Under the pieces are notes generated by a model. It was not told the DNA's origin. It made no database searches and saw only the letters and a program-made list of their open reading frames with translations. DNA of 64,000 nucleotides, from the NCBI GenBank assembly GCA_002269645.1, contig NIVC01000751.1:186001-250000 (forward strand), written 5' to 3'. This DNA is from Macrostomum lignano. Taxonomy: Eukaryota. The position numbers and the translations under genes were made by a program. Positions 15,939-51,944 of the stretch are shown piece by piece (the first letter of the stretch is position 1; every line of letters starts with the position of its first letter).

Positions 15939-17867
<1,929 letters not shown>

Positions 17868-18049: not shown

Positions 18050-18780
18050 AAATATGTTTCCCCTCTCTTTCATCCCACTCTCTTCCTTTGTCTCCCTCTC
18101 TCCCTTTGTCTCCCTCTCTCCCTTTGTCTCCCTCTCTCCTCTGTCCCCCTCTCTCCCTTTGTCTCCCTCTCTCCTCTGTCCCCCTCTCTGTCTCCATCTC
18201 TCCTCTGTCCCCCTCTCTGTCTCCATCTCTCCTCTGTCTCCATCTCTCCTCTGTCTCCCTCTCTCCTCTATCTCCCTCTCTCCTCTATCTCCCTCTCTCC
18301 TCTATCTCCCTCTCTCCTCTATCTCCCTCTCTCCGGTCTCCCCCTCTCTCCCTTTGTCTCCCTCTCTCCTCTGTCCCCCTCTCTGTCTCCATCTCTCCTC
18401 TGTCCCCCTCTCTGTCTCCATCTCTCCTCTGTCTCCATCTCTCCTCTGCCTCCCTCTCTCCTCTATCTCCGTCTCTCCTCTATCTCCCTCTCTCCTCTAT
18501 CTCCGTCTCTCCTCTATCCCCCTCTGTCTCCATCTCTCCTCTGTCCCCCTCTCTGTCTCCATCTCTCCTCTGTCTCCCTCTCTCCTCTATCTCCCTCTCT
18601 CCGGTCTCCCCCTCTCACTCTTCATCTTCCACTCTCTCTTTCTTTATCTCACCCTTCCTCTATTTGTCTATCAAGGAATCTCTCGCTCCCTTCATCTCCC
18701 TACCCTCATCTCCCGCTCTCTCCCTTCATCTCCCTCTCCCGTCATCTCTCCATCCCTTCATCTCACTTTATCTTTCCACT
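18050..18780. repeat. CT-rich polypyrimidine tract (duplicate ~25443-26170)
   Basis: Direct observation. Confidence 0.9.
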
Positions 18781-19199
18781 TGTAACTTTTATCTTCCCTC
18801 TATCGGCTACTTGCCTTTGTTCCCTTTTTTGCCAGTCTCTCAGTCCATCTCGCATCCTGACCGAGACCACTCCATCACTTATACTCCCCAGCCCAGCAGC
18901 TGCTATAAAAAACTTTTGTGTTGCTAATTATCAACAATTATACATACAAATCATTTTCCATCTGTTTTTTTCTATGACAGGTAAACATCAGTAATTTATG
19001 ACTCGCTAAGCGTTGACCCGCGCACTTATAGACGCCACGCAAGCAGCTGCAAGTGTTAATCAAAACTGACATCGCTTGGCGAATTTCGACCGAATTAATG
19101 ATAATCAATCAATTTCCTTTCAACGCAATTGTGCCTGACCTTTTTAGCTGGGACCAGTTAGACAGGCAATGCCGGCTGAGTACAATGCCGTGCAGATGT

Positions 19200-20180
19200 A
19201 GAGAGACGGAAGGACAGAGGAGGAAGATGGATAAAGGAGAGAGGGAGAGGGAGAGAAGTGGGAGAAAGGGAGAGAGAGAGGGTGAGAGAGGGAAAGACTG
19301 AGAGGGAGATGGTTAAAAGGGGAGATGGAGAGAGGGAGAGGGGAGAAAGGTGAGATAGGGTGAGAGGGAGAGAGGTAGAGTGTAGAAGAGAGTTAAAGAG
19401 AGAGAGAGAATGTGTAGAAGAGAGGGAGAGAGGGAAAGAGGAAGAGTGTAGAAGTGAGGTAGAGAGGGAGAGAGGGAAAGAGGGAGAGAGGGAGATGGTT
19501 AGAGGGGGAGATGGAGAGAGGGAGAGGGGAGAAAGGAGGTGAGATAGGGTGAGAGGGAGAGAGGGAGAGAGGGAGAGGGAGAGAGGGAGAGTGTAGAAGA
19601 GAGGGAGAGAGTGAGAGGGAGAGAGGGAGAGAGGGAGAGGAGAGAGGGAGAGGGAGAGAGGGAGAGAGGGAGAGGGAGAGAGGGAGAGAGGGAGATGGTT
19701 AGAGAGATGGAGAGAGGGAGAGGGGAGAAAGGAGGTGAGATAGGGTGAGAGGGAGAGAGGGAGAGAGGGAGAGGGAGAGAGGGAGAGTGTAGAAGAGAGG
19801 GAGAGAGTGAGAGGGAGAGAGGGAGAGAGGGAGAGGGAGAGAGGGAGAGGGAGAGAGGGAGAGAGGGAGAGGGAGAGAGGGAGAGGGAGAGGGAGAGAGG
19901 GAGATGGTTAGAGGGGGAGATGGAGAGAGGGAGAGGGGAGAAAGGAGGTGAGATAGGGTGAGAGGGAGAGGGAGAGAGGGAGAGAGGGAGAGGGAGAGAG
20001 GGAGAGAGGGAGATGGTTAGAGGGGGAGATAGAGAAAGGGAGAGGGGAGAAAGGAGGTGAGATAGGGTGAGAGGGAGAGGAGAGAGGTGAGAGAGGGAGA
20101 GAGGGAGAGGGAGAGAGGGAGAGAGAGAGAGAGGGAGAGTGTAGAAGAGAGGTGAGAGAGGGAGAGAGGGAGAGAGCAGA
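19200..20180. repeat. GA-rich polypurine tract (duplicate ~26593-27565, where the two copies differ most)
   Basis: Direct observation. Confidence 0.9.
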
Positions 20181-21477
20181 AGAGAAGTTCCACCTTCCAC
20201 ATGGCCTGTGAAAGAATAAATAAGGCATCACACTGAAGCTTCAAATATTAAAAAAACATTCATATTGTACAATCGTACAAAAAGTGCACAAAATAATACC
20301 CAAATTTGCATCCCAATCGAGGACTTAAAGGCCCTACTAAACATGTGGCCTCTGAAATAAAAACAGCGGGCGGTGGCCGCCACGCCTCTTTGCATTCGAA
20401 TCCGCCTATTAAAATGTTCGAGGAAATTTCCGAGGAAATTCAAGGCAAAAATGTACACGCATTATTATACGAGTGCAAATGTAGAAATCGCTCTGTAAAG
20501 TAGATTTTCGATACATATCGGCTTTACTCTCCGGCAATTATCTTCAAGCCTTAATTAAGAGATTGAATCCCAAAAACTAAACACAAAGAAAAGACATAAA
20601 CAATGAAGACTCATGTGTTAGAGTGCACCGACAGCGTACGCGCAAGAGGCTACTTTCAGTAAGCTAATTAGACAGTAGTATATATTTTTGTTGTGCAAAA
20701 AATCATATTTTAGGGAAATACGCTTAAAAAGATTTAAAATTACACTACAGTGGACAGACACATCGACGCTGTTATTTGCCTGTTTGATAACGGTAGACAC
20801 GGATTAAAGTAATTGCAGGTACCAGCCTGTGCATAGCAACGGTCTGTTTACCATAGATACCATAAAGGACACTTAAGGACGGAATCATATTATCCTCGAG
20901 TAAAACGAACAAAAGCTTGAAAAAAAATGGAATAAATTTTAAACAAAGTAAAATTTTGGTTCGGATTTTTAAATAAGCGGTAAAACAAAAAATGGCGAGT
21001 GATTATAACAAAACAAATGGACGCAATTGTTCAGTTCAAATTGTTTTTAAAAAGCAAAACAAAATATCCAAGAGTTGCAAAACCTGTGCTGAAAAAAATT
21101 CTACAATCAATTTCTGTTGAATATAATACTTTTGTTCCGTCAAAAATGATTTATTGATTTTCAAGTCTCCCTTGCCAAGTACTCGGTGTGGACGGAAGCG
21201 ATAAAATAGTACATTTGAGAATTTATTGTTGGATATTCTAAGAAATCAATTTCCGCGAAGCATGCTGCTGATCTCGTCCCAGTCGATGAAGCTGCTGTGG
21301 CTCTGGCTGTCGCTGCGGGCTGACCCAGGCTGCTGCTGAGGCTGCGGGTCACGTGAGTCGATCATAAAATAGTGAGTCATGCTTCACCTTCGAACTTTTT
21401 GACTCGTTGGCTCAAATCCCTGACCCATTGACCATAAAAACCTGACCCAATAGCCTGACTCACTGACGGTTAATTCA

Positions 21478-22433
21478 CTGACCCAAGCTACGAAATCCGA
21501 TGACCCACATTGCACAGTGTGACCCAAGCTACGAATTCCGTTGACCCACATTGCTCAGTCTGACCCAAGCTACGAAATCCGTTGACTCACATTGCCTGAC
21601 CTAAGCTACGAAATCCCATGACCCACATTGCCTGACCCAAGCACCGAAATCCGTTAACCCAAATTGTCTGACCCAAGCTACGAAATCCCATGACCCACAC
21701 TGTCTGACCCAAGCTACGAAATCCGATGACCCACATTGCTCAGTCTGACCCAAGCTACGAAATCCCATGACCCACACTGTCTGACCCAAGCTACGAAATC
21801 CGATGACCCACATTGCACAGTCTGACCCAAGCTACGAAATCCCATGACCCACACTGTCTGACCCAAGCTACGAAATCCGATGACCCACATTGCTCAGTCT
21901 GACCCAAGCTACGAAATCCGATGACCCACATTGCTCAGTCTGACCCAAGCTACGAAATCCGATGACCCACATTGCTCAGTCTGACCCAAGCTACGAAATC
22001 CCATGACCCACACTGTCCGACCCAAGCTACGAAATCCGATGACCCACATTGCTCAGTCTGACCCAAGCTACGAAATCCGATGACCCACATTGCACAGTCT
22101 GACCCAAGCTACGAAATCCGATGACCCACATTGCACAGTCTGACCCAAGCTACGAAATCCGATGACCCACATTGCACAGCCTGACCCAAGCTACGAAATC
22201 CGATGACCCACATTGCATTGTCTGACCCAAGCTACGAAATCCGTTGACCTACATTGCCTGACCCAAGCTACGAAATCCCATGACCCACACTGCCTGACCC
22301 AAGCTACGAAATCCGATGACCTACATTGCCTGACCCAAGCTACGAAATCCGATGACTCACATTGCACAGTTTGACCCAAGCTACGAAATCCGATGACCCA
22401 CATTGCATTGTCTGACCCAAGCTACGAAATCCG
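21478..22433. repeat. 36-41-bp minisatellite (tctgacccaagctacgaaatccgatgacccacattgc)
   Basis: Direct observation. Confidence 0.95.
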
Positions 22434-22437: not shown

Positions 22438-29816
<7,379 letters not shown>

Positions 29817-31008
29817 ATGACATTGCCTGACCCAAGCTACGAAATCCCATGACCCACACTGCCTGACCCAAGCTACGAAATCCGATGACTCACATTGCAT
29901 TGCCTGACCCAAGCTACAAAAACCAGTGAAGATTTGACAGCTCACCTGAGCCGGCCGACCGGCATCTCCGTAGACAATTCGAACCATATCGTCAGACAGA
30001 CTCCACGTGATATCGTCCAGCGACTCAGCCTGGCTGGGACTGGCGGGTCGCCGATCGGACTCAGGCTGAGCAGCGGCTCGACCGCCTGCCGGCGCTCTGC
30101 CACCCTTGGCAGCCTGCTTCATTGACGCTTGGCGCTTCAATTCTTGGGCTGAAAAATATAGTTAAAACGCGTTTGTTTTTTTGCTTATATTTCTACTTAC
30201 AGTAGAGTAGTCAGACGGTGACGCTTAATTCGGATTCAACCACAAATACTAGAATCACTAGATGGGCTTACTCAGCACATTTGCGTGTTAAGCTACTTTC
30301 AGTTCAGTACGAGTAGTAAGCTAAACAGAAGCATTTTAATGTATTGTATTTTTAAAGCCAAGGCACATTTATTGGCTTTAATCCGCCCAGCTTAAACTCT
30401 CAAACCGCGCCTTTCCACACTACTCCCCGCCCGCCCCAATTTTTATGGCCTTTCTCAGAATTCCAACCTAAAGCTGCCATGTACATTTCAGTGGCCAATG
30501 TACATTATTGCTGAACCAATTAGCAAGTTTTTTACGCCTGCAAGCTTGGACTTCTAAACTTATCAAAGTAATTTCAGCTGCCTTTATTTTTATAAAATAG
30601 CTTATGTATTCTTCTTTGCTACTGAGCTGAAAGTAGAAAGCTGTTTTACTAAGAATATGTGCCTGAGTGGCCCATCTAATTATTTGGATTCAATTTGGCT
30701 TCGATTTCGCCTGTTCTGCTTAGATTTCTACTTACAGTAGAGTAATAAGAACTTTAGTAGGTAAATTTAATCATTAATTTAGCAGCGCTTGATACTGGCT
30801 CACTGACCGAGAGTGGAGCCATAATTTTGCTGATAAGAAGAAATGTCAGAGATTAGAAAGTTAAAAATAAGGGCAGGGTACAGCCAGCAGAAACGGCCTA
30901 GCACGGACTGGTATTTAAAAGATAGCGAAACAAGAGCACCTGTTCCAGCTTAAGCAAGCTTAGCGCTCTAAGCAGTTGAGAAATACTGAGTATTCCACCT
31001 TGGAAAAA

Positions 31009-32586
31009 ATGCCGGACAATGGCTCCGATTCCAGCAGCCTGCTGGAAGCTGGAATCATGCAAACCGTGTGGGATCTGCGTGCCGGATACGAGGACACGCT
31101 TGCGTCCCCCCTGTTCCCAGTGTTCATCTCGGTGGGCTTCTACTTTGCCACCGTGTTCCCCATGACATTCTTCGACTTGTGCGCCAGCCGCTGGGCCTGG
31201 TACCGGAGCTACAAACTGCAGCCGGAGAAGGAGATCACCTGGCCAATGGTGAAGAAGTGCCTAGCCTTGGTGATGACTAATAACTTCCTGTACGTGCTCC
31301 CAGTCACGGTGGCGCAGTACATCTGGGTGCCGCCGACGCCTCTGCCAGCTAAGGCCCCGACAGCGCTGGAGTTCTTCGGCCAGCTGACGGCTCTGCTAGT
31401 GATCTTCGACTTTCAATACGGAGTCTGGCACGCGGTGCACCACAAGAATCGTTGGCTGTACAAGAACTTCCATTCCACTCATCATCAGTACCACACCAGC
31501 TTCGCCCTGGTTGGCCAGTACCTGCACCCGTGGGAGCTGTTCACCATTGGCCTACTGACCACCGTGGATCCGTGGTTCTTCCGATGCCATCCAATGACCT
31601 GCTGGGTGTGGATGCTGATGAACGTGTGGCTGGCTGTTGAGGCGCACTCAGGACTGGACATCTGGTTCAGTCTGAGCACTTTTGTGCCTTTCGGACTCTA
31701 TGGCGGCAGTCGCAAGCACGACATGCACCATATGAAACCGCTGACCAACTTCCAGCCGTACCTGAGCACGTGGGATCGATTCTTTGATTGGGACTGTCCC
31801 GGTGAGTCCGGCACTCGAGTAGGGGAGTTATTTAAAGTTACCATTTGCCCTCGAAAAGAACCGAATGTCCTTAGAAAATGAGCTGAAATGTCCTTGGAAT
31901 GAAGGAACCGAATGTCCTTAGAAAGGAGCTGAAATGTCCTTAGAAAGGAGCTGAAATGTCCTTGGAAGGAAGGAACCGAATGTCCTTAGAAAGGAGCTGA
32001 AATTTCCTTAGAAAGGAGCTGAAATGTCCTTAGAAAGGAGCTGAAATGTCCTTAGAAAGGAGCTGAAATGTCCTTAGAAAGGAGCTGAAATGTCCTTAGA
32101 AAGGAGCTGAAATGTCCTTAGAAAGGAGCTGAAATGTCCTTAGAAAGGAGCTGAAATGTCCTTAGAAAGGAGCTGAAATGTCCTTGGAAGGAAGGAAATG
32201 AATGTCCTTAGAATGGAGCTGAAATTTTCTCAAAAGGAACCGAATGTTGTTAGAAAAGGAGCTGAAATGTCCTCGAAAGGAACCGAATGTCCTTAGCAGC
32301 TAAATTCGAATGTCCCTTGGAAAAGACAAGAATGTTCTTAGAAAGAAGCTAAATAAAAGCATTTCAAAGCATTAACCACATCGTGTCCCCCATCAAACCG
32401 AGCGCAGGAATGAAAGGCGGCGGAGTCAAACCCGAGGAGCTGCTAGCCTGGGAGCAGCGCAACAAACGCAAACGGATGAGCAAGCACGCCACCGAGCTCA
32501 TGACTGGCACGGTGAACGGCTTCCTGTCTGTCACTGACGACGCCAAGGGTAACAATGAAACAACGGACACGGCCAAGGATAAATGA
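31009..32586 (+). CDS. CH25H: Cholesterol 25-hydroxylase-like protein (fatty acid hydroxylase superfamily), exons 31009-31801 and 32408-32586, ~323 aa
   Basis: His boxes WHAVHH, HSTHHQY, HDMHH; FDFQY, QYLHPWEL, CHPMT, VEAHSG, NFQPYLSTWD match the CH25H pattern. Phase-1 intron ccg|gtgagt to cgcag|ga joins in frame. Strict orthology not established. Confidence 0.85.
31855..32345. repeat. 22-bp intronic minisatellite (gagctgaaatgtccttagaaag)n
   Basis: Direct observation. Confidence 0.95.
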
Positions 32587-33181
32587 ATGCATAAATCTGT
32601 GTGCCGTTTCTTTCGATCTTAACTATGAAAGTCTATAAAAATATATGTCTAACTGCTACTATCAAGAAGTACTGACGGACAGTCTGACCTTTTCTTACTG
32701 TTATTAACCCTGTCTAATGCCTCAGTCCTTGAATACGCCAGTAAACAGGGTTAATTTAATAAACAACAAATATATATTGGACACCGAATTAGAAGTCTAA
32801 TAACAGTTTATTGAATAGGTTTAGCCACGCACCCTCGCAAATTTAGCCTCTACAATTTTTCTTAACCCTCCGCCATCATTGTTTGCTTAAGTTGCGCTTC
32901 TTCTTCTTCTGTTTTTCTATGCGCGAGACGAAACGAAACGAAACACCTTATATTAGCTCGACCCCCTGCTCAGGGTGACCAGAAAAATTTTGCCTGCAAC
33001 CCTCGCGAGGACAATGCACAGCGAGGCGGGCCTGGTTACAGCTTCTCTGTACAGTAGAAATATATAGAAGAAGGTGCGCAGAGTTAACCGTAGAAGAAAG
33101 ACCCAGGTGTTTGAGTCGCCATCGTTTCTATGTGAGAAGAACTGCATGCGCCAAAGACAGTTGGTAGACTGGTTTAACAAC

Positions 33182-36100
33182 ATGGAGTCAACTACATTCC
33201 GCGAACTGTTCCCGGTGCACGAGCTGACGGAAGAGATTAGCGGATTCTTTGGCTACATCAAGACGCGCCTACCGCGTCACTCTCTATTCGCTGCTCAACA
33301 GCAGCTCAACGTTCCGTCTGGGGCTAACGATAAAGCGGCGCTAGCAGCTCTTCAAGCCAAGGAGCGAAAAGAGGCCGAACTGCTGCTGAGAATGCAACGC
33401 GCCGCGGAGGAGAAAGACATGGCGGCTCTCTCCGGTCTGTTTTCCCCAGCCAACGTTGATAGGCCGGTGAAAGATGCCATGCGGTTAAGCGATTTGGCGG
33501 CCGCTTTGGGCAGCACGCCAATGCTGCAGCTGGTGCTGGACCATGGCGGCCAGATCAATGCCAAGAACGCTGCTGGCCAGCTGCCAATTCACTACGCCCT
33601 CACCAGTCCGGAGGTGCCGGCCACTGTTGCCTACCTGTTGGAGCGCGGTGCCGATCCGAATATTCCGATGCCGAACGGCGATTTTCTCATGCACAAAGCT
33701 TGCTCGGACAGCGCCACGACCTTGTTGGATCTGCTGTTAAACCATCAGGCAGATCCGGGCTGCTTGGACAGCCAGAGGCACACGCCGCTGCATCGAGCCT
33801 GTATCAATGATCTGAGAGAGCACGCCGAGATCGTCCTTGACGCTGCCCCGGATTTAATCAATCAGCAGGACGCGTTCGGTCGGACAGCGCTGCACATCGC
33901 CGTGGAGAATCAGAACATCCAGCTGATGAAGATGCTGCTAGAACAGGGCGCCACCATCGATCGTGAGACGGAGAACGGCATGACAGCCATCGATTCGATG
34001 ATGGTAACTAAGAACCGAGGCGCACTCAAAGAGCTCATCGTGTACTTCACTGAAAAAGTGTCTAAAGATGTCCGGGCGTACAAGATGACGGATCTCTACC
34101 GCAGTAAGCACTTTCGTCAATTCCTGAACGTTCTGAAGCTGATCGACTCGGAGGCGTGCAAATGCTACTACAGGGCCAGAGAGGAAGACTTGGAGCAGAA
34201 ACGCGAGACCGAGCTGAAGCTGGTCAACGATCTTCTAGACGTTGACGAGGAGAACACGCAGGACGTTATGGACTTTCAGTCCAAGATGATGGCGGCACTC
34301 AAAACTGGCGCCATACACGACTGCACTGACAACCGCGAGATCATTGACACGATCGCCATCTTCACTACAAAGTACATTCTGTTCAGAGAGGACGTTTCCA
34401 TGCTGCAAGACGTAATGCACTGCGGAGTGATTTGGCGACACGTGAGCCAATTTCTTGAAGAACACATCGCCACGCTGTATAGCAAGACCAACAAGGATGC
34501 CAGCATCATTAGCAAGCTGTTTGCGGAGCAGTTTATTGACTACAGCGCCGGTGGCAAGCGGGCCGCTTTGCGCAGAACAGCTTTGGTAAAGAAAGTTGGC
34601 GACGTCCTTGGCATGTACCAGCTGAGCCGGGTGAATGTCGCTCACTGCTTGGAGGTGACGAATCCGATTGACACGCTGCCAATCTGGTCCATACTGACCG
34701 GCAAGATGAACCTGACGCTAGAATTCTTAAGTCAGGTGCAATTCGAAGCTGTGCCAGTCTGCCTGATGGCGGCCGGATTGTTGAGAAATCTGCACAAAGT
34801 TCTCAACGTTGACACGCTGGAGCTGCCATCGATCGCTGTGCTAGCAGATCAATGCGAGATATTCGCCTGCAAAGTGGTTGAACGAATGTGCATGGTTGAC
34901 GTCAGCGAGCACAAGAAGACTACGTACCAATATCTGCTACAGATTCTGCCAGCGTTCGACAACCTGAACTGCCTTCACCTGGCTGCCAACTGCGGCTGCG
35001 ACACGTTCCTACGATTGGACACGTGCCAAAAAGCCATGGACGTTGCCTGGTACAGATTTCTGCTGGACGTGAATCCAATCTATCGCGAGATCATTATAGC
35101 CTTGGGCTGCATTCCGCTCAACCCACTGGTGTCTATCGCACTCTATCGGGATTATCGGCGATTGGCCCACGCTGAACAGGAGCGTCGACTAAGTCTCGAT
35201 GCTGTTCAGTCAGCAGATCAAACCGAAGGCTCTGGAAGTGGCGGCGGCGGCGGCGGCGGCGGCGGCTCGTCAAGGAATCGTCGAACCAGCTTCATGATCG
35301 AGGACGACGACACCAGAGACGCGACGAGTACAATGTTCTCAGACGCTTTGGAATTCCAGCCGCCGGATCCGCGGCTGCACGGCGGCACTATGGCCGCAAA
35401 AGTTTCCGAATGCTGCACCCTGTACTATTATTTCTATCAGATTCCGGCCGTGAAGTTTCGCTACTTCACCATCAGCCACCTGGTGCTGCTGTGCACCCTG
35501 TCCTATGTGGTGCAGTTTCAACTCAACGCCAGCATCACGGCGCTTGAGGTATTTGTCTACATCACGGCGTTTGGCTTCGTTGTTGAAGAGGCAAAAAAGT
35601 TTGTCCAGTCCATCTGGCGCCAGAAACTGTTGGACTATGTGAGAAACAAGTGGAACATTTTCGACTTTGTGACTAGCCTCATCTTTCTGACTGGTTTCGT
35701 CCTGCGGCTTGTGGTTCTGGAGTACGAGCCCTACAGTTTGGACCAGACTATGCTAGGCTTGTTCGACAACCGCCTGTGGTATTGTACCAGGGCATTTCTA
35801 GGCACTTACTGCCTGCTATTGTGGGTGAAGCTTTTGAACACATCTAGGGTGCATCAGTACTTTGGACCCAAACTAAAGATGATCTACAAAATGATCATCA
35901 AAGATCTCTTGCCGTTTCTATTCATCTTAATAATATTTCTATTGGGATTCGGCATACTCATGTGCAGCCTGCTCTATCCGAACGGTTACTACGCCTACAA
36001 TCCCAACAGGATGAGCCTAATCAGCATGGCCAAGCGACTCGTGCAATTCTGCTTCTTCAGCGTATTCGGCGAGTACCATCTGGACACGGTGAACGGCGAA

Positions 36101-36595
36101 AACTGCGAAGAGGTGTACACAGCCAGGACCAACAACACTCTGCCTTGTCCCAATCCTCAGTCAACCTTTATTGTACCCTACATACTACTGCCGCTGTACG
36201 TCACCATCACAACTATACTACTGCTCAGCCTCATTGTCGCCCTGTTCTCCAAAACAATTGAAGAGATCGACTGTAACAGCACGGCTCTGTGGCAGTTCGA
36301 ACGGTTCTTCTTCATCGCCTCCTACGCCAGCAACTCCTCGCTGCCGCCGCCGCTCAACGTCCTCGACATGGGCAGGGAGCTGCTACTGAAGGTGTGCCAC
36401 AGGTACCTGGAGCAGCCTCAGAAACCAATCGAAATGGACTTCTTCAACCAGGACGTGGCGTTGAAAGCTCTGATTTATCAGGCTATCGGGATGCGAAATT
36501 ATCGCAGCGAACTGCTGATCACGTGCGCCAACACTAAGGAGGCCAAAGCGGCCACTATCGGAGTGAAGCGGTCGGCAAGTCTGTTTCATCACTGA
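33182..36595 (+). CDS. TRP cation channel: ~6 N-terminal ankyrin repeats plus TRPM-type pre-TM/TM/TRP-box region, intronless, ~1137 aa (alternative ATG at 33146)
   Basis: Ankyrin motifs GQLPIHYA, RHTPLHRAC, GRTALHIAV; TRPM-like IWSILTGK..CLMAAGLL and LNCLHLAA..CQKAMDVAW; WNIFD, GPKLKMIYKM, FGEY pore, ALWQFERF..LPPPLN TRP domain. Confidence 0.9.
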   Translation: MESTTFRELFPVHELTEEISGFFGYIKTRLPRHSLFAAQQQLNVPSGANDKAALAALQAKERKEAELLLRMQRAAEEKDMAALSGLFSPANVDRPVKDAMRLSDLAAALGSTPMLQLVLDHGGQINAKNAAGQLPIHYALTSPEVPATVAYLLERGADPNIPMPNGDFLMHKACSDSATTLLDLLLNHQADPGCLDSQRHTPLHRACINDLREHAEIVLDAAPDLINQQDAFGRTALHIAVENQNIQLMKMLLEQGATIDRETENGMTAIDSMMVTKNRGALKELIVYFTEKVSKDVRAYKMTDLYRSKHFRQFLNVLKLIDSEACKCYYRAREEDLEQKRETELKLVNDLLDVDEENTQDVMDFQSKMMAALKTGAIHDCTDNREIIDTIAIFTTKYILFREDVSMLQDVMHCGVIWRHVSQFLEEHIATLYSKTNKDASIISKLFAEQFIDYSAGGKRAALRRTALVKKVGDVLGMYQLSRVNVAHCLEVTNPIDTLPIWSILTGKMNLTLEFLSQVQFEAVPVCLMAAGLLRNLHKVLNVDTLELPSIAVLADQCEIFACKVVERMCMVDVSEHKKTTYQYLLQILPAFDNLNCLHLAANCGCDTFLRLDTCQKAMDVAWYRFLLDVNPIYREIIIALGCIPLNPLVSIALYRDYRRLAHAEQERRLSLDAVQSADQTEGSGSGGGGGGGGGSSRNRRTSFMIEDDDTRDATSTMFSDALEFQPPDPRLHGGTMAAKVSECCTLYYYFYQIPAVKFRYFTISHLVLLCTLSYVVQFQLNASITALEVFVYITAFGFVVEEAKKFVQSIWRQKLLDYVRNKWNIFDFVTSLIFLTGFVLRLVVLEYEPYSLDQTMLGLFDNRLWYCTRAFLGTYCLLLWVKLLNTSRVHQYFGPKLKMIYKMIIKDLLPFLFILIIFLLGFGILMCSLLYPNGYYAYNPNRMSLISMAKRLVQFCFFSVFGEYHLDTVNGENCEEVYTARTNNTLPCPNPQSTFIVPYILLPLYVTITTILLLSLIVALFSKTIEEIDCNSTALWQFERFFFIASYASNSSLPPPLNVLDMGRELLLKVCHRYLEQPQKPIEMDFFNQDVALKALIYQAIGMRNYRSELLITCANTKEAKAATIGVKRSASLFHH

Positions 36596-36814
36596 GTCCA
36601 TCATCAATCAACAAATACGGATATGATCTTTTGCTTGTATTTTAACAGCCACACTCAACTTAATGTCTTTGTCTTAAAATTGCTGATAAAAAATCCATTA
36701 AACGTTATTTCTACCTAAAATATTATGGTAAAACGTGACTAAGTATTGTTTAATTTTTTGGTTTAGGAGCAATCAAAACTCATTTATAATTAAAAATTGT
36801 ACTTCTAATTATAA

Positions 36815-37692
36815 GCATCAGGGATGAGAAGCATCAGGGATGAGAAGCATCAGGGATGAGAAGCATCAGGGATGAGAAGCATCAGGGATGAGAAGCATCA
36901 GGGATGAGAAGCATGAGGGGTGAGAAGCATGAGGGGTGAGAAGCATGAGGGATGAGAAGCATGAGAGATGAGAAGCATGAGGGATGATGCATGAGGAATG
37001 AGAAGCTTTAGGGATGAGAAGCATCAGTGATGAGAAGCATCAGGGGTGAGAAGCATCAGTGATGAGAAGTATCAGGGATGAGAAGCATCAGTGATGAGAA
37101 GCATCAGTGATGAGAAGCATCAGGGATGAGAAGCATCAGTGATGAGAAGCATCAGGGATGAGAAGCATGAGGGGTGAGAAGCATGAGGGGTGAGAAGCAT
37201 CAGGGGTGAGAAGCATCAGTGATGAGAAGCATCAGGGATGATGCATGAGGAATGAGAAGCTTTAGGGATGAGAAGCATCAGTGATGAGAAGCATCAGGGG
37301 TGAGAAGCATCAGTGATGAGAAGTATCAGGGATGAGAAGCATCAGTGATGAGAAGCATCAGTGATGAGAAGCATCAGGGATGAGAAGCATCAGTGATGAG
37401 AAGCATCAGGGATGAGAAGCATCAGGGGTGAGAAGCATCAGTGATGAGAAGCATCAGGGATGAGAAGCATCAGGGATGAGAAGTATCAGGGATGAGAAGC
37501 ATCAGTGATGAGAAGCATCAGGGATGAGAAGCATCAGGGATGAGAAGCATCAGTGATGAGAAGCATCAGGGGTGAGAAGCATCAGTGATGAGAAGTATCA
37601 GGGATGAGAAGCATCAGTGATGAGAAGCATCAGGGATGAGAAGCATCAGGGATGAGAAGCATCAGGGATGAGAAGCATCAGGGGTGAGAAGC
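36815..37692. repeat. 16-bp minisatellite (gagaagcatcagggat)n
   Basis: Direct observation. Confidence 0.95.
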
Positions 37693-37715
37693 GACACAGA
37701 GGACAGGCCACTTAC

Positions 37716-38599
37716 CCTGCCGTTTCGTGATCATCACTGGTGTCTGGCGCATCTGCTCGTGCAGCCGTCTCTGCGCCTGCGGATCCGGTCGCCTCGACGG
37801 TCCCTTACGCGTCAACTCGGGCCGCTGCATTCGAACTACCTGGGTGAGAGGCTTCTGCGGCGGCGGCTGGTAGGGCACCAGCTCGTCCTCTGAGTCCGGC
37901 TCCCGCGGTGTCGGCCTGTTACTGCTAGCCTGCTGCATCATCGCCTCGGAGGCTGCGGCAGACGACAGCTCCACCATCCGGTTCAGGTAGTCCTCGTACT
38001 CCGCGTCAGTCTGGAATTCGCCTCTCAGACCGAAGCCCGAGTCGACTTGACGACCGGATTTGTCTTTGGCGTTCCTTCTCGACGAATTCGAAGCGGCCTT
38101 AGCTGCTGCGGCCATCCGGCGCTGCTCCATGGCCAGCTCCTCCTCCATCAGCTGGATGGCCGACTTCTGCGGCTCGAGGCGCGGTCGGATGGCCTCGTGC
38201 GAGTCGCGAAGTCCGCCAGAGGAGGCCGCGCCGGACAGGTCCTCCTGCATCAGGCGGCGGAGGTGAGCCTCTTCGCGTTGTTCGCGTTCAGCGCGTAGCT
38301 GCTCCCGGCGTCGCTGACGCTCGGCTTCGGCAGCTTTCCAGTCGGAGACGGTGGGTGCTGCCCCGCCGCCGCCGGCGCCACCCTGATAGGGCCTCGCCTC
38401 AGCCTCTCTTCGCTCTTGCTTCTGCTTGCGGTACTGCCCCAGCTGCTCCTTGCGACGCTGCTCCATCCACTGGCGCAGCTGAGCTCGCTCTTCGGGCGTT
38501 CGATGCTGCGGCTGCAGCTGGTGCTTCACGGCTGCCGCCGCGGCGCCCCGGCGTCGGTGTGACGACGCTGGACTGAGAGAGTGGGACCTGGCCGATGCA
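37716..38599 (-). CDS. CPLANE1: CPLANE1 exon 21 (Joubert-associated C-terminal domain; acceptor approximate)
   Basis: EERAQLRQWMEQRRKEQLGQYRKQKQERREAEARPY; donor cagg|gtaagt. Confidence 0.8.
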
Positions 38600-41500
38600 C
38601 TGCCAACGCCGAGATGCGAATTTCTTGTTAGGATCGGTTGGCACCCTGCTATGGACTCTAGTTAGTTACCTGGTCTGCTGTTACTCTCTCCGGATGCTAG
38701 TTACTCTCTCTGGATGCTAGTTACTCTCTCTGGATGCTAGTTACTCTCTCTCCGGATGCTAGTTACTCTCTCTGGATGCTAGTTACTCTCTCTGGATGCT
38801 AGTTACTCTCTCTCCGGATGCTAGTTACTCTCTCTGGATGCTAGTTACTCTCTCTGGATGCTAGTTACTCTCTCTGGATGCTAGTTACTCTCTCCGGATG
38901 CTAGTTACTCTCTCTGGATGCTAGTTACACTCTCCAGATGCTAGTTACTCTCTCTGGATGCTAGTTACACTCTCAGGATGCTAGTTACTCTGGATGCTAG
39001 TTACTCTCTCTGGATGCTAATTACTCTCTCTGGATGCTAGTTACTCTCTCTGGATGCTAGTTACTCTCTCTGGATGCTAGTTACTCTCTCTGTATGCTAG
39101 TTACTCTCTCCGGATGCTAGTTACTCTCTCTGGATGCTAGTTACTCTCTCTGGATGCTAGTTACTCTGTCCGGATGCTAGTTACTCTTTCCGGATGCTAG
39201 TTACTCTCTCTGGATGCTAGTTACTCTCTCCGGATGCTAGTTACTCTCTCTGGATGCTAGTTACACTCTCCGGATGCTAGTTACTCTCTCTGGATGCTAG
39301 TTACTCTCTCTGGATGCTAGTTACTCTCTCTGGATGCTAGTTACTCTCTCTGTATGCTAGTTACTCTCTCTGTATGCTAGTTACTCTCTCCGGATGCTAG
39401 TTACTCTCTCTGTATGCTAGTTACTCATAATGGATTCCAGTTACTCATAATGGCTGCTAGTTACTCTCTCTGGATGCTAGTTACTCTCTCTGGATGCTAG
39501 TTACTCTCTCCGGATGCTAGTTACTCTTTCCGGATGCTAGTTACTCTCTCTGGATGCTAGTTACTCTCTCCGGATGCTAGTTACACTCTCCGGATGCTAG
39601 TTAGTCTCTCCGGATGCTAGTTACTCTCTCTGGATGCTAGTTACACTCTCCGGATGCTAGTTACTCTCTCTGGATGCTAGTTACTCTCTCTGGACGCTAG
39701 TTACTCTCTCCGGATGCTAGTTACTCTCTCTGGATGCTAGTTACTCTCTCTGGATGCTAGTTACTCTGTCCGGATGCTAGTTACTCTTTCCGGATGCTAG
39801 TTACTCTCTCTGGATGCTAGTTACTCTCTCTGGATGCTAGTTACTCTCTCTGGATGCTAGTTACTCTCTCTGTATGCTAGTTACTCTCTCTGGATGCTAG
39901 TTACTCTCTCTGGATGCTAGTTACTCTCTCTGGATGCTAGTTACTCTCTCTGTATGCTAGTTACTCATAATGGATTCCAGTTACTCATAATGGCTGCTAG
40001 TTACTCATAATGGATTCCAGTTACTCATAATGGCTGCTAGTTACTCATAATGGATTCCAGCTACTCATAATGGCTGCTAGTTACTCATAATGGATTCCAG
40101 TTACTCATAATGGCTGCTAGTTACTCATGATGGATTCCAGTTACTCATTATGGATGCTAGTTACTCACTATGAATGCTAGTTACATGTTAATTACTCTAC
40201 ATAGAAAAATTAAAAACTTACGCATTAGCTGACGCTCCGGCCGAACGATGCGAGTGCAGCTGGTCGAGTTCCAATGGTGGCACCTCACTATTTGAGTCAG
40301 GCATTGGTGGGGTGCTGAAAGTTCATGAAGTTCATTTTTTAATTGATCGAACTTGTTACCGTTTTGCTAAGTGAATTTAGGCTGATGATGAGGAGAACAA
40401 GTCTCACCGCGCCAAATCGCGCCTCGGCGTGAACGGGTCCGGGTCTTTGCGCTGGTGCACTGGCGGCGCCTGCTGCTGACCAGCAGCTGGTCTTTGCTCA
40501 GCCATGTTAGTCTGGTTGGCTAAGGGCTGACGCTGAGGACTGCGGTCTCTCTGACCATCATCAGGTTCGTAAGTCTGCGACTGGTCAGCAGACTGCAGCT
40601 CGATGATGGTGGACAGAAGCTGGAAGGTTTTGGTTGAAAAAAATCTGTTTAAAGAGAGCACAAACTACGAAAATTGGATATAGCCTACACAGGCAATAAA
40701 CCCTGGATCAGCCAGTCAAATCAGCGAGAAGCACCCACCATCCATTGGCATAAGCCCTGGATCAGCCAGTCAAATCAGCGGGAAGCACCCACCATCCATT
40801 GGCATAAGCCCTGGATCAGGCAGTCAAATCAGCGGGAAGCACCCACCATCCATTGGCATAAGCCCTGGATCAGCCAGTCAAATCAGGTAGAAGCACTCAC
40901 CACCCAACTATACAGGCTATAAACCCTGGATCAGCCAGTCAAATCAGCGAGAATCACCCACCACCCCATTTACACGCAAGCCATAAGCCCTGGATCAGCC
41001 AGTCAAATCAGCTAGAAGCACCCACCTCCCTACTACACAGGCTATAAACCTTGGATCAGCCAGTCAAATCAGCGAGGAGTGCCAACCACCCCATTTACAT
41101 ACAGGCCATAAACCTTGAATCAGCCATTCAAATCAGCTAGAGAGAAGCACCCACCACCCCATTTGCACAGGCTATAAACCCTGGATCAGCCAGTCAAATC
41201 AGCGAGAAACACCCACCACCCCATTTACGTACAAGCCATAAACCCTGGATCAGCTAGTCAAATCAGCTAGAAGCATTCACTACCCCACTACACAAGCTAT
41301 AAACCTTGGATCAGCCATTCAAATCAGCGAGGAGTGCCAACCACCCCATTAACGCACAGTCCATAAACAGCAAATATGTTTACAAAAAATTAATCAAGCT
41401 GACCCTTTTATTTCTTTCATAGTCGCTGTCAAACCGATCGGACATATCCGCAATAAGACGCAGCCGTTTCTCCATGTCTTGCAGTACAGCATTTGAGTGT

Positions 41501-49200: not shown

Positions 49201-50705
49201 AGTCCCCAGCGAGCCAGCGGCACCAAATGCAGAGTCCAGGCCAGACAATCGGCAGACTTGGCTGACCAGACTGCATCGACATCGGCAGCAATGTCACCTG
49301 TTGCCGGCTGCAGAGCCAAGGCGGAGCGCTCTCTGGCCAGCAGCGACAGTCGATCGCGGCAGTGCAAAGCCCACAGGCAGCTGGCCAGGTCGCGAACCGC
49401 CGACACGCAGCTGACGGTCGACGCTCCACCGTCAAGCCGTCCTGCCGCTGCGCCACCATCGTCTTCAGCATCCGTTGACCTCAGCACGGAGGCGAACAAA
49501 CCGGCACTCCGCTCCAGGTGTCTCCGCAGTTCAGGCTGGCCCAGATGTCGGCAGGCGGTGAGCAGGCTCCGGCAGTAGCGCCGGAACATGGGCGAAAGCG
49601 TGTTGGACGCGCGCAGGGACAACAGGAACAGGCGAACAATGCTCCAGATTCGCTGGCGTTGTCCAGCTTCTGGCGACTGGTCAGCCGCTCCAGCAGTTCC
49701 CGCAGGCTGCGGGCAGTAGGCTGGCGGAGCCGGCAGGTAAGTGCCAGTTGGCACCAGAGCTGGCATCAACGACATCACCGAATGCAACTCGCGAAGAAGC
49801 CGACGAAGGAACGGCTCCAGCAGGGGTGTCTCGGTGACGCAGCCAGCCAGAAAGCAGTCTGTCAGCGCCTGCAAAGCCTCTTTGTCTGGCGTTGCCGATC
49901 GAACTGAAATATCGAAGGAAATTCGCAACGGAACAGTTAAAACGGCCCTTTTACGGACAACATATGAAATTGAAGAGTTCTTTATGGACTAATATAAGCG
50001 CTTACCATCCTGAACCACTAGTCTGTCGAATAGCAGATCCAATTTATCGGTGAGAATTTGTTGAACAGATCTTGTGCTGGTCTCATTCGACACTCGAATT
50101 GAGCTGCAATTAGTGTTAATTAATTATGTTAATTATTTATGTACTTACAGGCACAAAGGAGATACTCCTTCGACTAACAGGTGATGTAATTAATGTAACA
50201 AGTATATAAAATCCTCCCATGTAACAAGTTTAATCTTACAGGCAAAGTACCCAATCTAACAGGTAAAATTCCAATCTAACAGGTAAAATCCCTAATATAA
50301 CAGGTAAAATCCCCAACCTAATAGGTAAAATCCCTAATCCACCAGGTGAAAAAGTTCAACATACCAGGCCAACGCGTCCCTCTGCTGCAATTCCACAGCC
50401 AGCGACCGGAGATAGGTGAGCACCAGTGCCGACTTCCAATCGGACAGCTGTCCGGTCACGTGAATAGCCTCGTCCAACAGTCCGGACACCAGGTGTAATT
50501 CTACGCATTTCTCGGCCGTCCAGCTGGCCTCAAGGCCGTCTCGGCGAATCAGTTCAATCACGGTGGAGTGCAGAAACGGCATCCGGTTCTTGTCTGCGTT
50601 GGCGGCGAGGATGCGGAGATGTGGTTTCAGTTAATTACTAGCTAGCTGACTGACTGACTAACTAACTAACTAACTAACTGATTAACTAACTAACTAACTA
50701 ACTAG

Positions 50706-50744
<39 letters not shown>

Positions 50745-50881
50745 GCTAACTAACTAACTAGCTAACTAACTAACTAACTAACTAACTGATTAACTAACTA
50801 ACTAACTAACTAGCTAACTAACTGACTGACTGACTAACTAACTAACTAACTAACTGATTAACTAACTAACTAACTAACTAG

Positions 50882-50936
<55 letters not shown>

Positions 50937-51022
50937 GCTAACTAACTAACTAACTAGCTAACTAACTAACTAACTAACAAACAAACAAACAAACAAACTA
51001 ACTGACTAACTAACTAACTGAT

Positions 51023-51088
<66 letters not shown>

Positions 51089-51136
51089 GCTAACTAACAA
51101 ACTAACAAACAAACAAACAAACAAACTAACTAACTG

Positions 51137-51183
<47 letters not shown>

Positions 51184-51236
51184 GATTAACTAACTAACTA
51201 ACTAACTAACTAACTGACTGACTAACTAACTAACTG

Positions 51237-51271
<35 letters not shown>

Positions 51272-51319
51272 GACTAACTAACTAACTGACTAACTAACTG
51301 ACTAACTAACTAACTGACT

Positions 51320-51372
<53 letters not shown>

Positions 51373-51392
51373 GACTGACTAACTAACTGACT

Positions 51393-51437
<45 letters not shown>

Positions 51438-51481
51438 GACTGACTGACTAACTAACTGACTAACTAACTAACTAACTGACT

Positions 51482-51518
<37 letters not shown>

Positions 51519-51566
51519 GACTGACTGACTAACTAACTAACTAACTAACTAACTGACTAAACTAAA

Positions 51567-51607
<41 letters not shown>

Positions 51608-51739: not shown

Positions 51740-51780
<41 letters not shown>

Positions 51781-51895: not shown

Positions 51896-51944
<49 letters not shown>

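What the first reader, a model, noticed from the sequence alone, without database searches (positions are those of the whole stretch)
33182..36595. Ankyrin-repeat N-terminus joined to a TRPM-type channel body in a single 3.4-kb exon
Seen: ~6 canonical ankyrin repeats (~33450-34040), then TRPM-like MHR4 motifs (IWSILTGK/CLMAAGLLRNL and LNCLHLAA..CQKAMDVAW), S1-S6 and a TRP box, with no recognisable SLOG (MHR1/2) or NUDT9-H domain. Established: canonical TRPM channels lack ankyrin repeats and start with SLOG, whereas ankyrins characterise TRPA/C/N/V; the praziquantel target in schistosomes is a TRPM. Inference: a domain-shuffled or distinct TRP lineage, possibly retroposed since neighbouring genes have introns.
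Basis: partly seen in the sequence, partly recalled or inferred. Interest (0 to 1): 0.75.

Follow-up and report, generated by a model that had tools for sequence, protein, structure and literature searches.

The report
Flatworm ankyrin-TRPM-like channel gene (TRPM_MCLZ family)
This is an intact, selectively maintained, intron-less gene of the free-living flatworm Macrostomum lignano for a cation channel with six ankyrin repeats on a melastatin-type (TRPM) body; the odd architecture is real but already described, because it is the family of the schistosome meclonazepam target TRPM_MCLZ.

Summary
Window 33146-36595 (+) is one uninterrupted 1149-codon ORF. It encodes six ankyrin repeats, a TRPM MHR3/4-type helical region, S1-S6 and a TRP helix. 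No SLOG or NUDT9H coding sequence occurs anywhere in the 64 kb window.

The organism is Macrostomum lignano (99% identical to BOX15_Mlig021145g1). The gene is under purifying selection (dN/dS 0.075 against two homeologous or allelic copies).

The transmembrane and MHR parts are unambiguously TRPM-type, but the architecture is not undescribed. It matches the 'TRPM-like' group of TRPM_MCLZ (Smp_333650), the schistosome meclonazepam target: N-terminal ankyrin repeats, no SLOG, no NUDT9H, three exons.

In my distance trees the window gene sits in a Macrostomum-specific expansion of at least 11 paralog lineages. That expansion joins the fluke and tapeworm TRPM_MCLZ orthologs with 100% bootstrap, excluding every SLOG-bearing TRPM.

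Recent retroposition of this gene is not supported. The whole subfamily is intron-poor (0-3 introns against 20 in a canonical Macrostomum TRPM) and shares no intron position with that TRPM. This points to an old intron-less ancestor.

The window copy and its sister paralog have diverged at the ligand pocket and Ca2+ site.

Verdict: a new member of a known kind, of modest interest.

The parts
33146..36595 (+). Complete single-exon CDS (1149 codons plus stop) of the ankyrin-TRPM-like channel.
   Evidence: ORF list. 99% identical to P0001 / BOX15_Mlig021145g1, which starts at the equivalent of 33146. P0001 loci are single-exon. dN/dS 0.075.
33455..34045 (+). Six ankyrin repeats (aa ~104-300).
   Evidence: Pfam Ank_2/Ank_3/Ank_4/Ank_5/Ank, E 1e-15 to 1e-22. 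AF2 helix pairs at aa 114-132, 147-166, 181-199, 214-233, 248-266 and 281-306 with pLDDT ~86-93.
34046..34351 (+). Helical linker (aa 301-402) between the ankyrin repeats and the TRPM-homologous region. It has no detectable counterpart in canonical TRPMs and occupies the place of SLOG/MHR1-2.
   Evidence: AF2 helices with lower pLDDT. It lies outside the hhalign match, which starts at aa 403.
34352..35215 (+). TRPM homology region, MHR3(part)/MHR4-like (aa 403-690). It holds the motifs IWSILTGK, CLMAAGLLRNL, LNCLHLAA and CQKAMDVAW.
   Evidence: Pfam PF25508 TRPM2-like, 26.6 bits (cut-off 27) for this copy and 28-46 bits in paralogs. hhalign 100%, E 5e-90. Motif coordinates.
35192..35388 (+). 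Disordered pre-S1 linker (aa 683-747) containing a (GGC)9 poly-Gly tract at 35240-35266. The tract is length-polymorphic between copies (9 vs 7 Gly).
   Evidence: AF2 pLDDT <50. TRF. Alignment with L010/L011.
35390..36247 (+). Pre-S1 helix and transmembrane domain. S1 aa 767-792, S2 799-824, S3 835-860, S4 876-900, S4-S5 linker 907-916, S5 921-943, pore helix 958-972, filter FGEY 974-977 (36065-36076), S6 1006-1034.
   Evidence: Pfam Ion_trans, E 6e-13. PDB phmmer of the TM part: the top 60 hits are all TRPM, 2e-29 to 2e-13. AF2. Foldseek top hits are TRPM2/3/4/5/7.
36257..36358 (+). TRP helix (aa 1038-1062, LWQFERFFFIASY) followed by the clade-wide LPPPLN motif (36341-36358).
   Evidence: AF2. 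Alignment to the canonical W-x-L-Q-R-Y TRP box. PPP is invariant in 15 clade members.
36359..36592 (+). Short helical C-terminus (aa ~1072-1149). There is no NUDT9H and no kinase domain.
   Evidence: AF2. Pfam finds nothing there. tblastn with NUDT9H-bearing TRPMs finds nothing in the window outside 34508-36406.
32587..33145 (+). Intergenic / 5' region between the stop of the upstream fatty-acid-hydroxylase gene (~32586) and the ATG. A TATATA sits at 33061-33066, 80 nt upstream of the ATG. Its promoter role is inferred only.
   Evidence: Sequence read. The upstream gene was identified by Pfam FA_hydroxylase and by the fused model P0002.

Best explanation
The locus is a functional gene of Macrostomum lignano. 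It encodes one subunit of a tetrameric, probably Ca2+-permeable, non-selective cation channel of the flatworm-specific 'TRPM-like' subfamily. The best-known member of that subfamily is TRPM_MCLZ, the schistosome channel opened by the anthelmintic meclonazepam.

Shown here: the protein keeps the TRPM MHR3/4 shell, the S1-S4 voltage-sensor-like domain, the pore and the TRP helix. A six-repeat ankyrin solenoid plus a ~100-aa helical linker sit where canonical TRPMs carry the nucleotide-binding SLOG domain. There is no C-terminal NUDT9H.

Inferred: gating cannot use the ADP-ribose/SLOG/NUDT9H route. It most likely depends on a ligand or physical cue acting in the S1-S4/TRP pocket, where meclonazepam is proposed to bind in the schistosome channel. 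The ankyrin domain would serve as the bottom cytosolic layer or as a partner-binding platform. The FGEY filter resembles the Glu-containing filters of divalent-permeable TRPM3/6/7 (my own knowledge of those filters), so Ca2+ entry is the likely output.

The gene is one of at least 11 Macrostomum paralog lineages that are jointly co-orthologous to the single parasite gene. Together with its sister paralog it has changed several pocket and Ca2+-site residues: H->F774, Y->F811, Q->K818, R->K895, N898 and Y->F1054 in both copies, and E->S1059 in the window copy only. I therefore expect different pharmacology and no canonical Ca2+ co-activation.

Its intron-less state reflects the intron-poor state of the whole subfamily, not a recent retroposition.
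For: Architecture.

TRPM-type body:
- PDB phmmer gives nvTRPM2 at 2e-32 over aa 494-1061, and TRPM3 at 2e-29 with the TM part alone. All 60 best hits are TRPM.
- Foldseek top hits are nvTRPM2, TRPM2 chanzyme and TRPM5/3/4/7.
- hhalign to canonical TRPMs gives E 5e-90.

Functional gene: 27 synonymous against 7 non-synonymous differences to two other genomic copies, dN/dS 0.075.

Family placement:
- The exhaustive HMMER search finds Macrostomum paralogs first. The first non-Macrostomum hits are ANK-only, SLOG-less flatworm proteins.
- Neighbour-joining trees on 494 columns and 69 sequences give 100% bootstrap for the ANK-only clade with two distance measures. The TM-only tree gives 94% and 70%.

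Identity of the parasite members as TRPM_MCLZ orthologs:
- The Dicrocoelium protein (1378 aa) carries the published key residues H827, H831, Y864, E868 and R943 at a constant +18 offset, with Tyr at the variable S4 site (H946 in S. mansoni).
- The cestode protein has Phe at the variable S4 site, as published.
- The O. felineus gene has 3 exons over ~50 kb plus an alternative terminal-exon model, as published.

Free-living homologs of Smp_333650 (Schmidtea, Dendrocoelum) appear in a supplementary table of PMC12058154.

Residue mapping.
Against: - I could not obtain the Smp_333650 sequence, so the link to TRPM_MCLZ runs through fluke and tapeworm orthologs identified by signature, not by name.
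- The trees are distance-based (NJ) without TRPS, TRPC or TRPN outgroups. Only the 150 best of 1177 HMMER hits were visible.
- By raw score the window protein is no closer to the O. felineus ortholog (158 bits) than to a canonical Macrostomum TRPM (181 bits). Its clade membership rests on the tree, the shared architecture and less-diverged paralogs (206-218 bits to O. felineus, against at most 154 for canonical TRPMs).
- No expression or functional data exist for this gene. Ion selectivity, the gating cue and the role of the ankyrin domain are inferences.
- PF25508 scores 26.6 bits in this copy, just under its 27-bit cut-off.
Confidence: 0.8

Rival explanations
1. A categorically new TRP lineage produced by a recent domain shuffle in this genome.
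For: Pan-metazoan TRPM/TRPS surveys report both families as ankyrin-free and did not sample flatworms. No paper in the library mentions these Macrostomum genes.
Against: The same architecture is published for TRPM_MCLZ in 63 parasitic flatworms. The window gene clusters with those orthologs at 100% bootstrap. The architecture is shared by at least 11 Macrostomum paralog lineages that are only 26-52% identical to the window protein, so it is old.
Confidence: 0.05
2. A recent retrogene: a processed mRNA copy of an intron-containing parent inserted here, either on its way to pseudogenisation or newly functional.
For: The CDS has no intron, whereas the upstream FA-hydroxylase gene and a canonical Macrostomum TRPM (20 introns) are spliced. 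In the NCBI annotation of the sister contigs the gene lies inside the span of a large opposite-strand gene.
Against: There is no poly(A) tract after the 3' UTR. Divergent paralogs P0003 (51-52% identical) and P0127 (28%) are also intron-less. No close intron-bearing parent exists, because the nearest intron-bearing paralogs are only ~34% identical. Selection is strongly purifying.
Confidence: 0.07
3. An assembly or annotation chimera that joins an unrelated ankyrin gene to a 5'-truncated TRPM gene.
For: One public model of this very locus (P0002) is a chimera, fused to the upstream fatty-acid hydroxylase. Macrostomum assemblies are repeat-rich and polyploid.
Against: ANK and TRPM parts lie in one continuous ORF in three independent genomic copies (the window, L010 and L011). 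The same holds for single-exon paralogs and for trematode and cestode orthologs.
Confidence: 0.01
4. A TRPN/TRPA/TRPC-type ankyrin channel whose TM region only superficially resembles TRPM.
For: NOMPC appears among the best hits (rank 3).
Against: The NOMPC sequence hit covers only the ankyrin part (aa 160-271). With the TM part alone, all 60 best PDB hits are TRPMs. MHR4 motifs and PF25508 are TRPM-specific.
Confidence: 0.01

Closest known systems
TRPM_MCLZ (Schistosoma mansoni Smp_333650) and its orthologs in trematodes, cestodes and monogeneans; the 'TRPM-like' group of Rohr et al. 2026 (PMC12861061), Park et al. 2024 (PMC10788528) and Sprague et al. 2024 (PMC11731825)
   Same: - N-terminal ankyrin repeats, then MHR3/4-like region, S1-S6 and TRP helix.
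- No SLOG/MHR1-2 and no NUDT9H.
- Very few exons.
- Groups with the fluke and tapeworm orthologs to the exclusion of all SLOG-bearing TRPMs.
- Shared clade signatures such as GP(K/R)LKM and LPPP(L/F)N.
   Different: - Shorter (1149 vs 1380 aa) and with no introns rather than two.
- Not a one-to-one ortholog: it is one of at least 11 Macrostomum-specific paralog lineages.
- Only 2 of the 6 published meclonazepam-contact residues are kept (H778, E815). The S4 Arg is Lys895, the variable S4 site is Asn898 and the TRP-helix Tyr is Phe1054.
- It comes from a free-living host, and drug sensitivity is untested.
Canonical TRPM channels (e.g. Nematostella TRPM2 6co7, TRPM3, TRPM5, TRPM7; Macrostomum Mlig003066 and Mlig025325)
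   Same: MHR3/4, pre-S1, S1-S6, pore helix and TRP helix are homologous (hhalign E 5e-90; PDB E 1e-22 to 1e-32; Foldseek top hits). A Glu-containing filter (FGEY) recalls TRPM3/6/7.
   Different: - No SLOG domain, no NUDT9H or kinase, and six bona fide ankyrin repeats instead.
- 0 introns against 20.
- Two of the five canonical Ca2+-site positions are replaced: Q->K818 and E->S1059. The site definition comes from the TRPM4/TRPM5 literature and is my own knowledge.
TRPS (soromelastatin; C. elegans ced-11), sister family of TRPM
   Same: A divergent TRPM-like channel family found in protostomes.
   Different: TRPS has SLOG and Nudix domains and no ankyrin repeats (PMC7306681). Its phylogenetic relation to the flatworm clade was not tested here, because no named TRPS sequence was in my set.
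TRPN/NOMPC, TRPA1, TRPC and TRPV (ankyrin-bearing TRP families)
   Same: An N-terminal ankyrin solenoid in front of a 6-TM TRP channel.
   Different: The TM and TRP-domain sequence is TRPM-type, not TRPN/A/C/V. The MHR4 region is present. There are only six repeats, against 29 in NOMPC.

Membership tests
TRPM (canonical melastatin) | N-terminal SLOG (MHR1/2) domain | tested here: not met
   No LSDAT_euk hit. The hhalign match to canonical TRPMs begins after their SLOG domain. tblastn of five SLOG-bearing TRPMs finds nothing in the 64-kb window outside 34508-36406.
TRPM (canonical melastatin) | MHR3/MHR4 homology region upstream of S1 | tested here: met
   PF25508 scores 26.6 bits here (cut-off 27) and 28-46 bits in paralogs. 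hhalign 100%, E 5e-90, from aa 403.
TRPM (canonical melastatin) | TRPM-type S1-S6, pore and TRP helix | tested here: met
   TM-only phmmer against the PDB: the top 60 hits are all TRPM, 2e-29 to 2e-13. Foldseek top hits are TRPM2/3/4/5/7.
TRPM (canonical melastatin) | Absence of canonical N-terminal ankyrin repeats (Himmel et al. 2020) | tested here: not met
   Six repeats by Pfam (E 7e-22) and AF2.
TRPM (canonical melastatin) | C-terminal coiled-coil (pole helix) used for tetramer assembly | tested here: inconclusive
   AF2 shows short helices at aa 1102-1139 with mixed confidence. No oligomer was modelled.
Flatworm 'TRPM-like' / TRPM_MCLZ subfamily | Architecture: N-terminal ankyrin repeats, no SLOG, no NUDT9H, TRPM-type channel | tested here: met
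.
Flatworm 'TRPM-like' / TRPM_MCLZ subfamily | Monophyly with parasite TRPM_MCLZ orthologs, excluding SLOG-bearing TRPMs | tested here: met
   NJ on 494 columns: 100% bootstrap with both Kimura and Scoredist distances. TM-only trees: 94% and 70%. Parasite members were identified by residue signature and exon structure. Caveats: distance method only, and Smp_333650 itself was not in the set.
Flatworm 'TRPM-like' / TRPM_MCLZ subfamily | Very few exons (three in parasites) | tested here: met
   0 introns here and in P0003 and P0127. 1-3 introns in P0123, P0122 and P0004. 2 introns in O. felineus. 20 introns in the canonical P0147.
Flatworm 'TRPM-like' / TRPM_MCLZ subfamily | One-to-one orthology with Smp_333650 | tested here: not met
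   The window gene lies in a Macrostomum-only clade of at least 11 lineages (99.5-100% bootstrap) that as a whole is sister to the parasite group.
Flatworm 'TRPM-like' / TRPM_MCLZ subfamily | Conserved meclonazepam-contact residues (Sm H827, H831, Y864, E868, R943, Y1117) | tested here: not met
   The window protein has F774, H778, F811, E815, K895 and F1054, so 2 of 6 are kept. This is a pharmacological feature rather than a family-defining one.
Flatworm 'TRPM-like' / TRPM_MCLZ subfamily | Activation by meclonazepam, giving Ca2+ entry | not testable with these tools
   Needs heterologous expression and Ca2+ imaging.
TRPS (soromelastatin) | SLOG and Nudix domains, ankyrin-free, divergent TRP box | tested here: not met
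   No SLOG or Nudix is present and ankyrin repeats are. Phylogenetic distance to TRPS was not tested.
TRPN/NOMPC | About 29 ankyrin repeats and a TRPN-type TM domain | tested here: not met
   Six repeats. The NOMPC sequence match is confined to the ankyrin part. The TM part matches only TRPMs among the top 60 hits.

The most novel reading that the evidence does not exclude
The whole flatworm ankyrin-TRPM-like subfamily, including the anthelmintic target TRPM_MCLZ, began as a 5'-truncated, intron-less (retroposed) copy of a TRPM gene that lost SLOG and NUDT9H and became joined to ankyrin-repeat coding sequence. This would have happened before macrostomorphs, triclads and neodermatans split. The subfamily then stayed single-copy in parasites and expanded to at least 11 lineages in Macrostomum.

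Evidence so far:
- Clade members have 0-3 introns, and none matches in position and phase any of the 20 introns of a canonical Macrostomum TRPM.
- Three divergent paralogs have no introns at all.

An alternative route is SLOG deletion from the ANK+SLOG TRPMs that flatworms also possess. That group is the weakly supported sister of the clade (62-70% bootstrap).
Probability: 0.3. Interest if true: 0.5.

Novelty: new member of a known kind. Interest (0 to 1): 0.33.

Why it matters
TRPM_MCLZ is a validated drug target in schistosomes, yet its natural stimulus, ion selectivity and physiological role are unknown, and parasites are hard to manipulate.

Macrostomum lignano is a free-living flatworm that I understand to be genetically tractable (my own knowledge). 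Showing that it carries a large, selectively maintained expansion of the same ankyrin-TRPM-like subfamily offers a model for asking what these channels sense and what the ankyrin domain does. It also provides natural variants of the drug pocket: Arg/Lys and Tyr/Asn in S4, His/Phe in S1, and Gln/Lys at the Ca2+ site.

The two pan-metazoan TRPM/TRPS classifications (Himmel 2020, Morini 2026) omitted flatworms. Their statement that the TRPM/TRPS lineage is ankyrin-free therefore needs a flatworm exception.

For genome annotation, the locus is ordinary: a real gene, correctly modelled in NCBI and mis-fused in one UniProt/WormBase model.

Tried and rejected
- **Whole-protein homolog search.** It was swamped by generic ankyrin proteins. 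Only the top four hits were informative.
- **Word-index searches with the ankyrin-less part and with a clade profile.** Both returned only Macrostomum proteins. The profile search apparently seeded from the first sequence only and was wasted.
- **Obtaining the Smp_333650 sequence.** I could not get it. The supplements of PMC12861061 and PMC10788528 are not held, so I anchored the parasite clade by published residue numbers and exon structure instead.
- **Source organism of Logan run DRR639838.** This run holds two clade members, P0132 and P0129, but the organism could not be identified. The same is true of the two MetaClust-only members, P0143 and P0151.
- **Raw similarity as a clade test.** I rejected it. 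The high WIN-to-Opisthorchis score (280 bits) is inflated because model P0126 appears to carry two channel-coding terminal exons (inferred from its length and three matched stretches). Against the single-copy P0279 the score is 158 bits, no better than against canonical TRPMs.
- **Considered and rejected.** Chance ORF, pseudogene, assembly chimera, TRPN/TRPA/TRPC identity and recent retrogene (see the rival explanations).
- **Promoter/terminator scan.** The sigma-70 tool was not used because the genome is eukaryotic.

Full report
**1. What is in the sequence**

Window 33074-36595 (+) is a single open frame. The 99%-identical NCBI protein BOX15_Mlig021145g1 (P0001) starts at the equivalent of 33146, which gives 1149 codons here.

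Pfam finds ankyrin repeats (E 7e-22), an Ion_trans domain (aa 762-1030 of the 1137-aa version) and a borderline TRPM2-like/MHR hit (PF25508, 26.6 bits against a cut-off of 27).

I built an AlphaFold2 model from a 15-sequence clade alignment (mean pLDDT 73.8, pTM 0.67). It shows:
- six ankyrin helix pairs at aa 114-306 (domain about window 33455-34045);
- a helical region to aa ~689;
- a disordered Gly-rich linker at aa 683-747;
- then pre-S1, S1-S6, a pore helix and a TRP helix.

Two tests show there is no SLOG or NUDT9H:
- A profile-profile comparison of the clade alignment with seven canonical SLOG-bearing TRPMs gives 100% probability and E 5e-90. It aligns window aa 403-1096 to aa 658-1349 of Macrostomum TRPM P0147, that is, from just after the SLOG domain to past the TRP helix.
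- tblastn of five canonical TRPMs against the whole 64-kb window hits only 34508-36406.

**2. It is a real, constrained gene**

Two other contigs of the M. lignano assembly GCA_002269645.1 carry the same gene as a single 3444-nt CDS. Their flanks are 88-95% identical to the window, so they are homeologs or alleles. Against them the window CDS has 26-27 synonymous and 7 non-synonymous differences (dN/dS about 0.075) and a 2-codon length change in a (GGC)n tract.

The upstream gene is a fatty-acid hydroxylase that ends at ~32586. The UniProt model P0002, which splices it onto the channel ORF, is an artefact.

**3. Which TRP family**

With the TM part alone, the 60 best PDB sequence matches are all TRPMs: TRPM3 at 2e-29, TRPM1, TRPM5, TRPM2 chanzyme, nvTRPM2, TRPM7, TRPM8 and TRPM4. 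No TRPC, TRPN, TRPA or TRPV appears in that range.

Foldseek on the model returns nvTRPM2, TRPM2 chanzyme and TRPM5/3/4/7. NOMPC appears only because of its ankyrin repeats.

**4. Relatives**

An exhaustive HMMER search with the ankyrin-less 848 aa found 1177 relatives.
- The closest are Macrostomum paralogs: Mlig023207, 030565, 019746, 012389, 033956/026745, 022043/007691, 004154, 008432/029514, 011337 and 000356. Every full-length one I scanned has ANK, TRPM2-like and Ion_trans domains and no SLOG.
- The next hits are SLOG-less ankyrin channels from other flatworms: Opisthorchis, Dicrocoelium, Fasciolopsis ('TRPM7'), Schistocephalus ('TRPM7') and Protopolystoma. There are also four sequences of unknown source.

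Neighbour-joining trees gave the following support:

| Grouping | Data set | Bootstrap |
|---|---|---|
| Window gene + Mlig023207 | all sets | 100% |
| Macrostomum-only clade | TM-only; TM-only and MHR4-to-TRP | 99.5%; 100% |
| All ANK-only sequences, no SLOG-bearing member | MHR4-to-TRP, 494 columns, 69 sequences, two distance measures | 100% |
| All ANK-only sequences | TM-only | 94% and 70% |

The sister group, with 62-70% support, is a set of flatworm SLOG-bearing TRPMs.

Raw scores alone would not place the window protein. It scores 158 bits to O. felineus against 181 bits to a canonical Macrostomum TRPM. Less-diverged paralogs score 206-218 bits to O. felineus, while canonical TRPMs score at most 154.

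**5. This architecture is already described**

The Marchant laboratory identified S. mansoni Smp_333650 (TRPM_MCLZ) as the meclonazepam target. It is 1380 aa, with three exons over ~50 kb. They noted that it lacks MHR1/2-SLOG and NUDT9H and has N-terminal ankyrin repeats. They suggested calling the group 'TRPM-like' and catalogued 63 orthologs in trematodes, cestodes and monogeneans (PMC10788528, PMC11731825, PMC12861061).

I could not retrieve Smp_333650 itself, but the parasite sequences in my clade carry its signatures:
- The 1378-aa Dicrocoelium protein has H, H, Y, E and R at Sm positions 827, 831, 864, 868 and 943, each at a constant +18 offset. It has Tyr at the variable S4 site.
- The cestode protein has Phe at that site, as published.
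- The O. felineus gene has exactly three exons over ~50 kb and a second model with another terminal exon. This matches the published exon 3a/3b duplication.

A supplementary BLAST table of PMC12058154 lists planarian homologs of Smp_333650: Schmidtea at E 1e-150 and Dendrocoelum at E 3e-145.

No paper in the library mentions the Macrostomum genes. The two pan-metazoan TRPM/TRPS studies sampled no flatworms and describe the lineage as ankyrin-free.

**6. Intron evidence**

I determined exact GT-AG junctions:

| Gene | Type | Introns |
|---|---|---|
| Window gene, P0003, P0127 | ANK-only clade, Macrostomum | 0 |
| P0123 | ANK-only clade, Macrostomum | 1 |
| P0122, P0004 | ANK-only clade, Macrostomum | 3 (shared positions) |
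| O. felineus ortholog (P0279) | ANK-only clade, parasite | 2 |
| P0147 | canonical Macrostomum TRPM | 20 |

None of the clade's introns coincides in position and phase with any of the 20 in P0147. No poly(A) remnant follows the window gene.

So 'retroposed' is not supported for this gene in particular. An intron-less, possibly retroposed founder of the whole subfamily is a live hypothesis. The rival route is SLOG deletion from the ANK+SLOG+TRPM architecture that flatworms also possess.

**7. Likely mechanism (inferred)**

The protein probably forms a tetrameric cation channel.
- The filter FGEY (aa 974-977) carries a Glu, as in divalent-permeable TRPM3/6/7, which suggests Ca2+ permeation.
- Without SLOG and NUDT9H, ADP-ribose-type gating is excluded.
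- The S1-S4/TRP pocket, the proposed meclonazepam site in the schistosome channel, is the likeliest ligand site.

Mapped through the alignments, the window protein and its sister paralog differ from the rest of the clade at S1 F774 (His elsewhere), S4 K895 (Arg), N898 (Tyr, His or Phe) and TRP-helix F1054 (Tyr). F811 (Tyr in the parasite orthologs) is not special to this pair: other Macrostomum paralogs also lack Tyr there, and most have Phe. Two positions equivalent to the TRPM4/5 Ca2+ ligands are changed in the window protein: Q->K818 and E->S1059. N837, D840 and E815 are kept.

I therefore expect it not to respond to meclonazepam and not to use canonical Ca2+ co-activation. Both predictions are untested.

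**8. Verdict**

The feature is real and correctly read. It is a new, free-living-flatworm member of a known and recently described kind. Two points are modestly new: the size of the Macrostomum expansion, and the intron pattern that bears on how the subfamily arose.

Noticed in passing
window 30976-32586 (+), minisatellite 31864-32296: The upstream neighbour is a fatty-acid-hydroxylase gene (Pfam E 4e-21). Its last intron holds a 22-nt minisatellite of about 19.5 copies. UniProt model P0002 wrongly splices this gene onto the channel ORF through a GT at ~32512 and an AG at ~33067.
   Followed up: partly
window 36813-37692: A 16-nt minisatellite (AAGCATCAGGGATGAG, ~55 copies, 90% matches) lies about 220 nt downstream of the channel's stop codon. 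A further 20/62-nt array lies at 38676-38991.
   Followed up: no
window ~15555-22433 and ~22948-29921: A tandem duplication with a 7393-bp offset: identical-length ORFs recur at +7393, and both copies match the same single stretch of the sister contigs L010/L011 at 87-96% identity. The duplication may be specific to this haplotype or homeolog.
   Followed up: partly
P0283 (Mlig025325g2), P0147 (Mlig003066), P0141 (Clonorchis), P0288 (S. mekongi): Canonical flatworm TRPMs carry 2-3 ankyrin repeats (Pfam Ank_2, 33-37 bits) N-terminal to the SLOG domain. This ANK+SLOG+TRPM arrangement contradicts the 'ankyrin-free TRPM' generalisation and may be the precursor of the SLOG-less subfamily.
   Followed up: partly
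L010 4257-23444 (-), L011 5962-23444 (-), L003 1-9484 (-): In the NCBI annotation, the channel gene's sister copies and paralog Mlig012389 both lie inside the span of a large opposite-strand gene model (3230/3240 aa, and 506 aa respectively). They are nested genes or over-extended models. In the window, minus-strand ORFs flank the locus at 26551-27615 and 37678-38529.
   Followed up: no
window 35240-35266: A (GGC)9 tract encoding poly-Gly in the disordered pre-S1 linker is two codons longer than in the two sister copies. It is the only indel in the CDS.
   Followed up: yes
P0126 / P0278 (Opisthorchis viverrini, 1906 / 2059 aa) vs P0279 (O. felineus, 1321 aa); L007: The O. viverrini models are much longer than the O. 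felineus one and match the query in three stretches. This is consistent with both alternative terminal exons (published 3a/3b) being concatenated into one model, which inflates similarity scores.
   Followed up: partly
window 50001-54000 and 60001-64000: These segments have low GC (0.34-0.37). The first also has strong negative GC skew (-0.44). Both contrast with the ~0.5 GC of the rest of the window and are probably repeats or transposon remnants.
   Followed up: no
L008, L009 (Logan run DRR639838): Two further SLOG-less ankyrin-TRPM-like transcripts (P0132, 1072 aa; P0129, 801 aa) come from an unidentified organism. They group with the parasite branch of the clade and carry Tyr/Tyr instead of His/His in S1.
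   Followed up: partly
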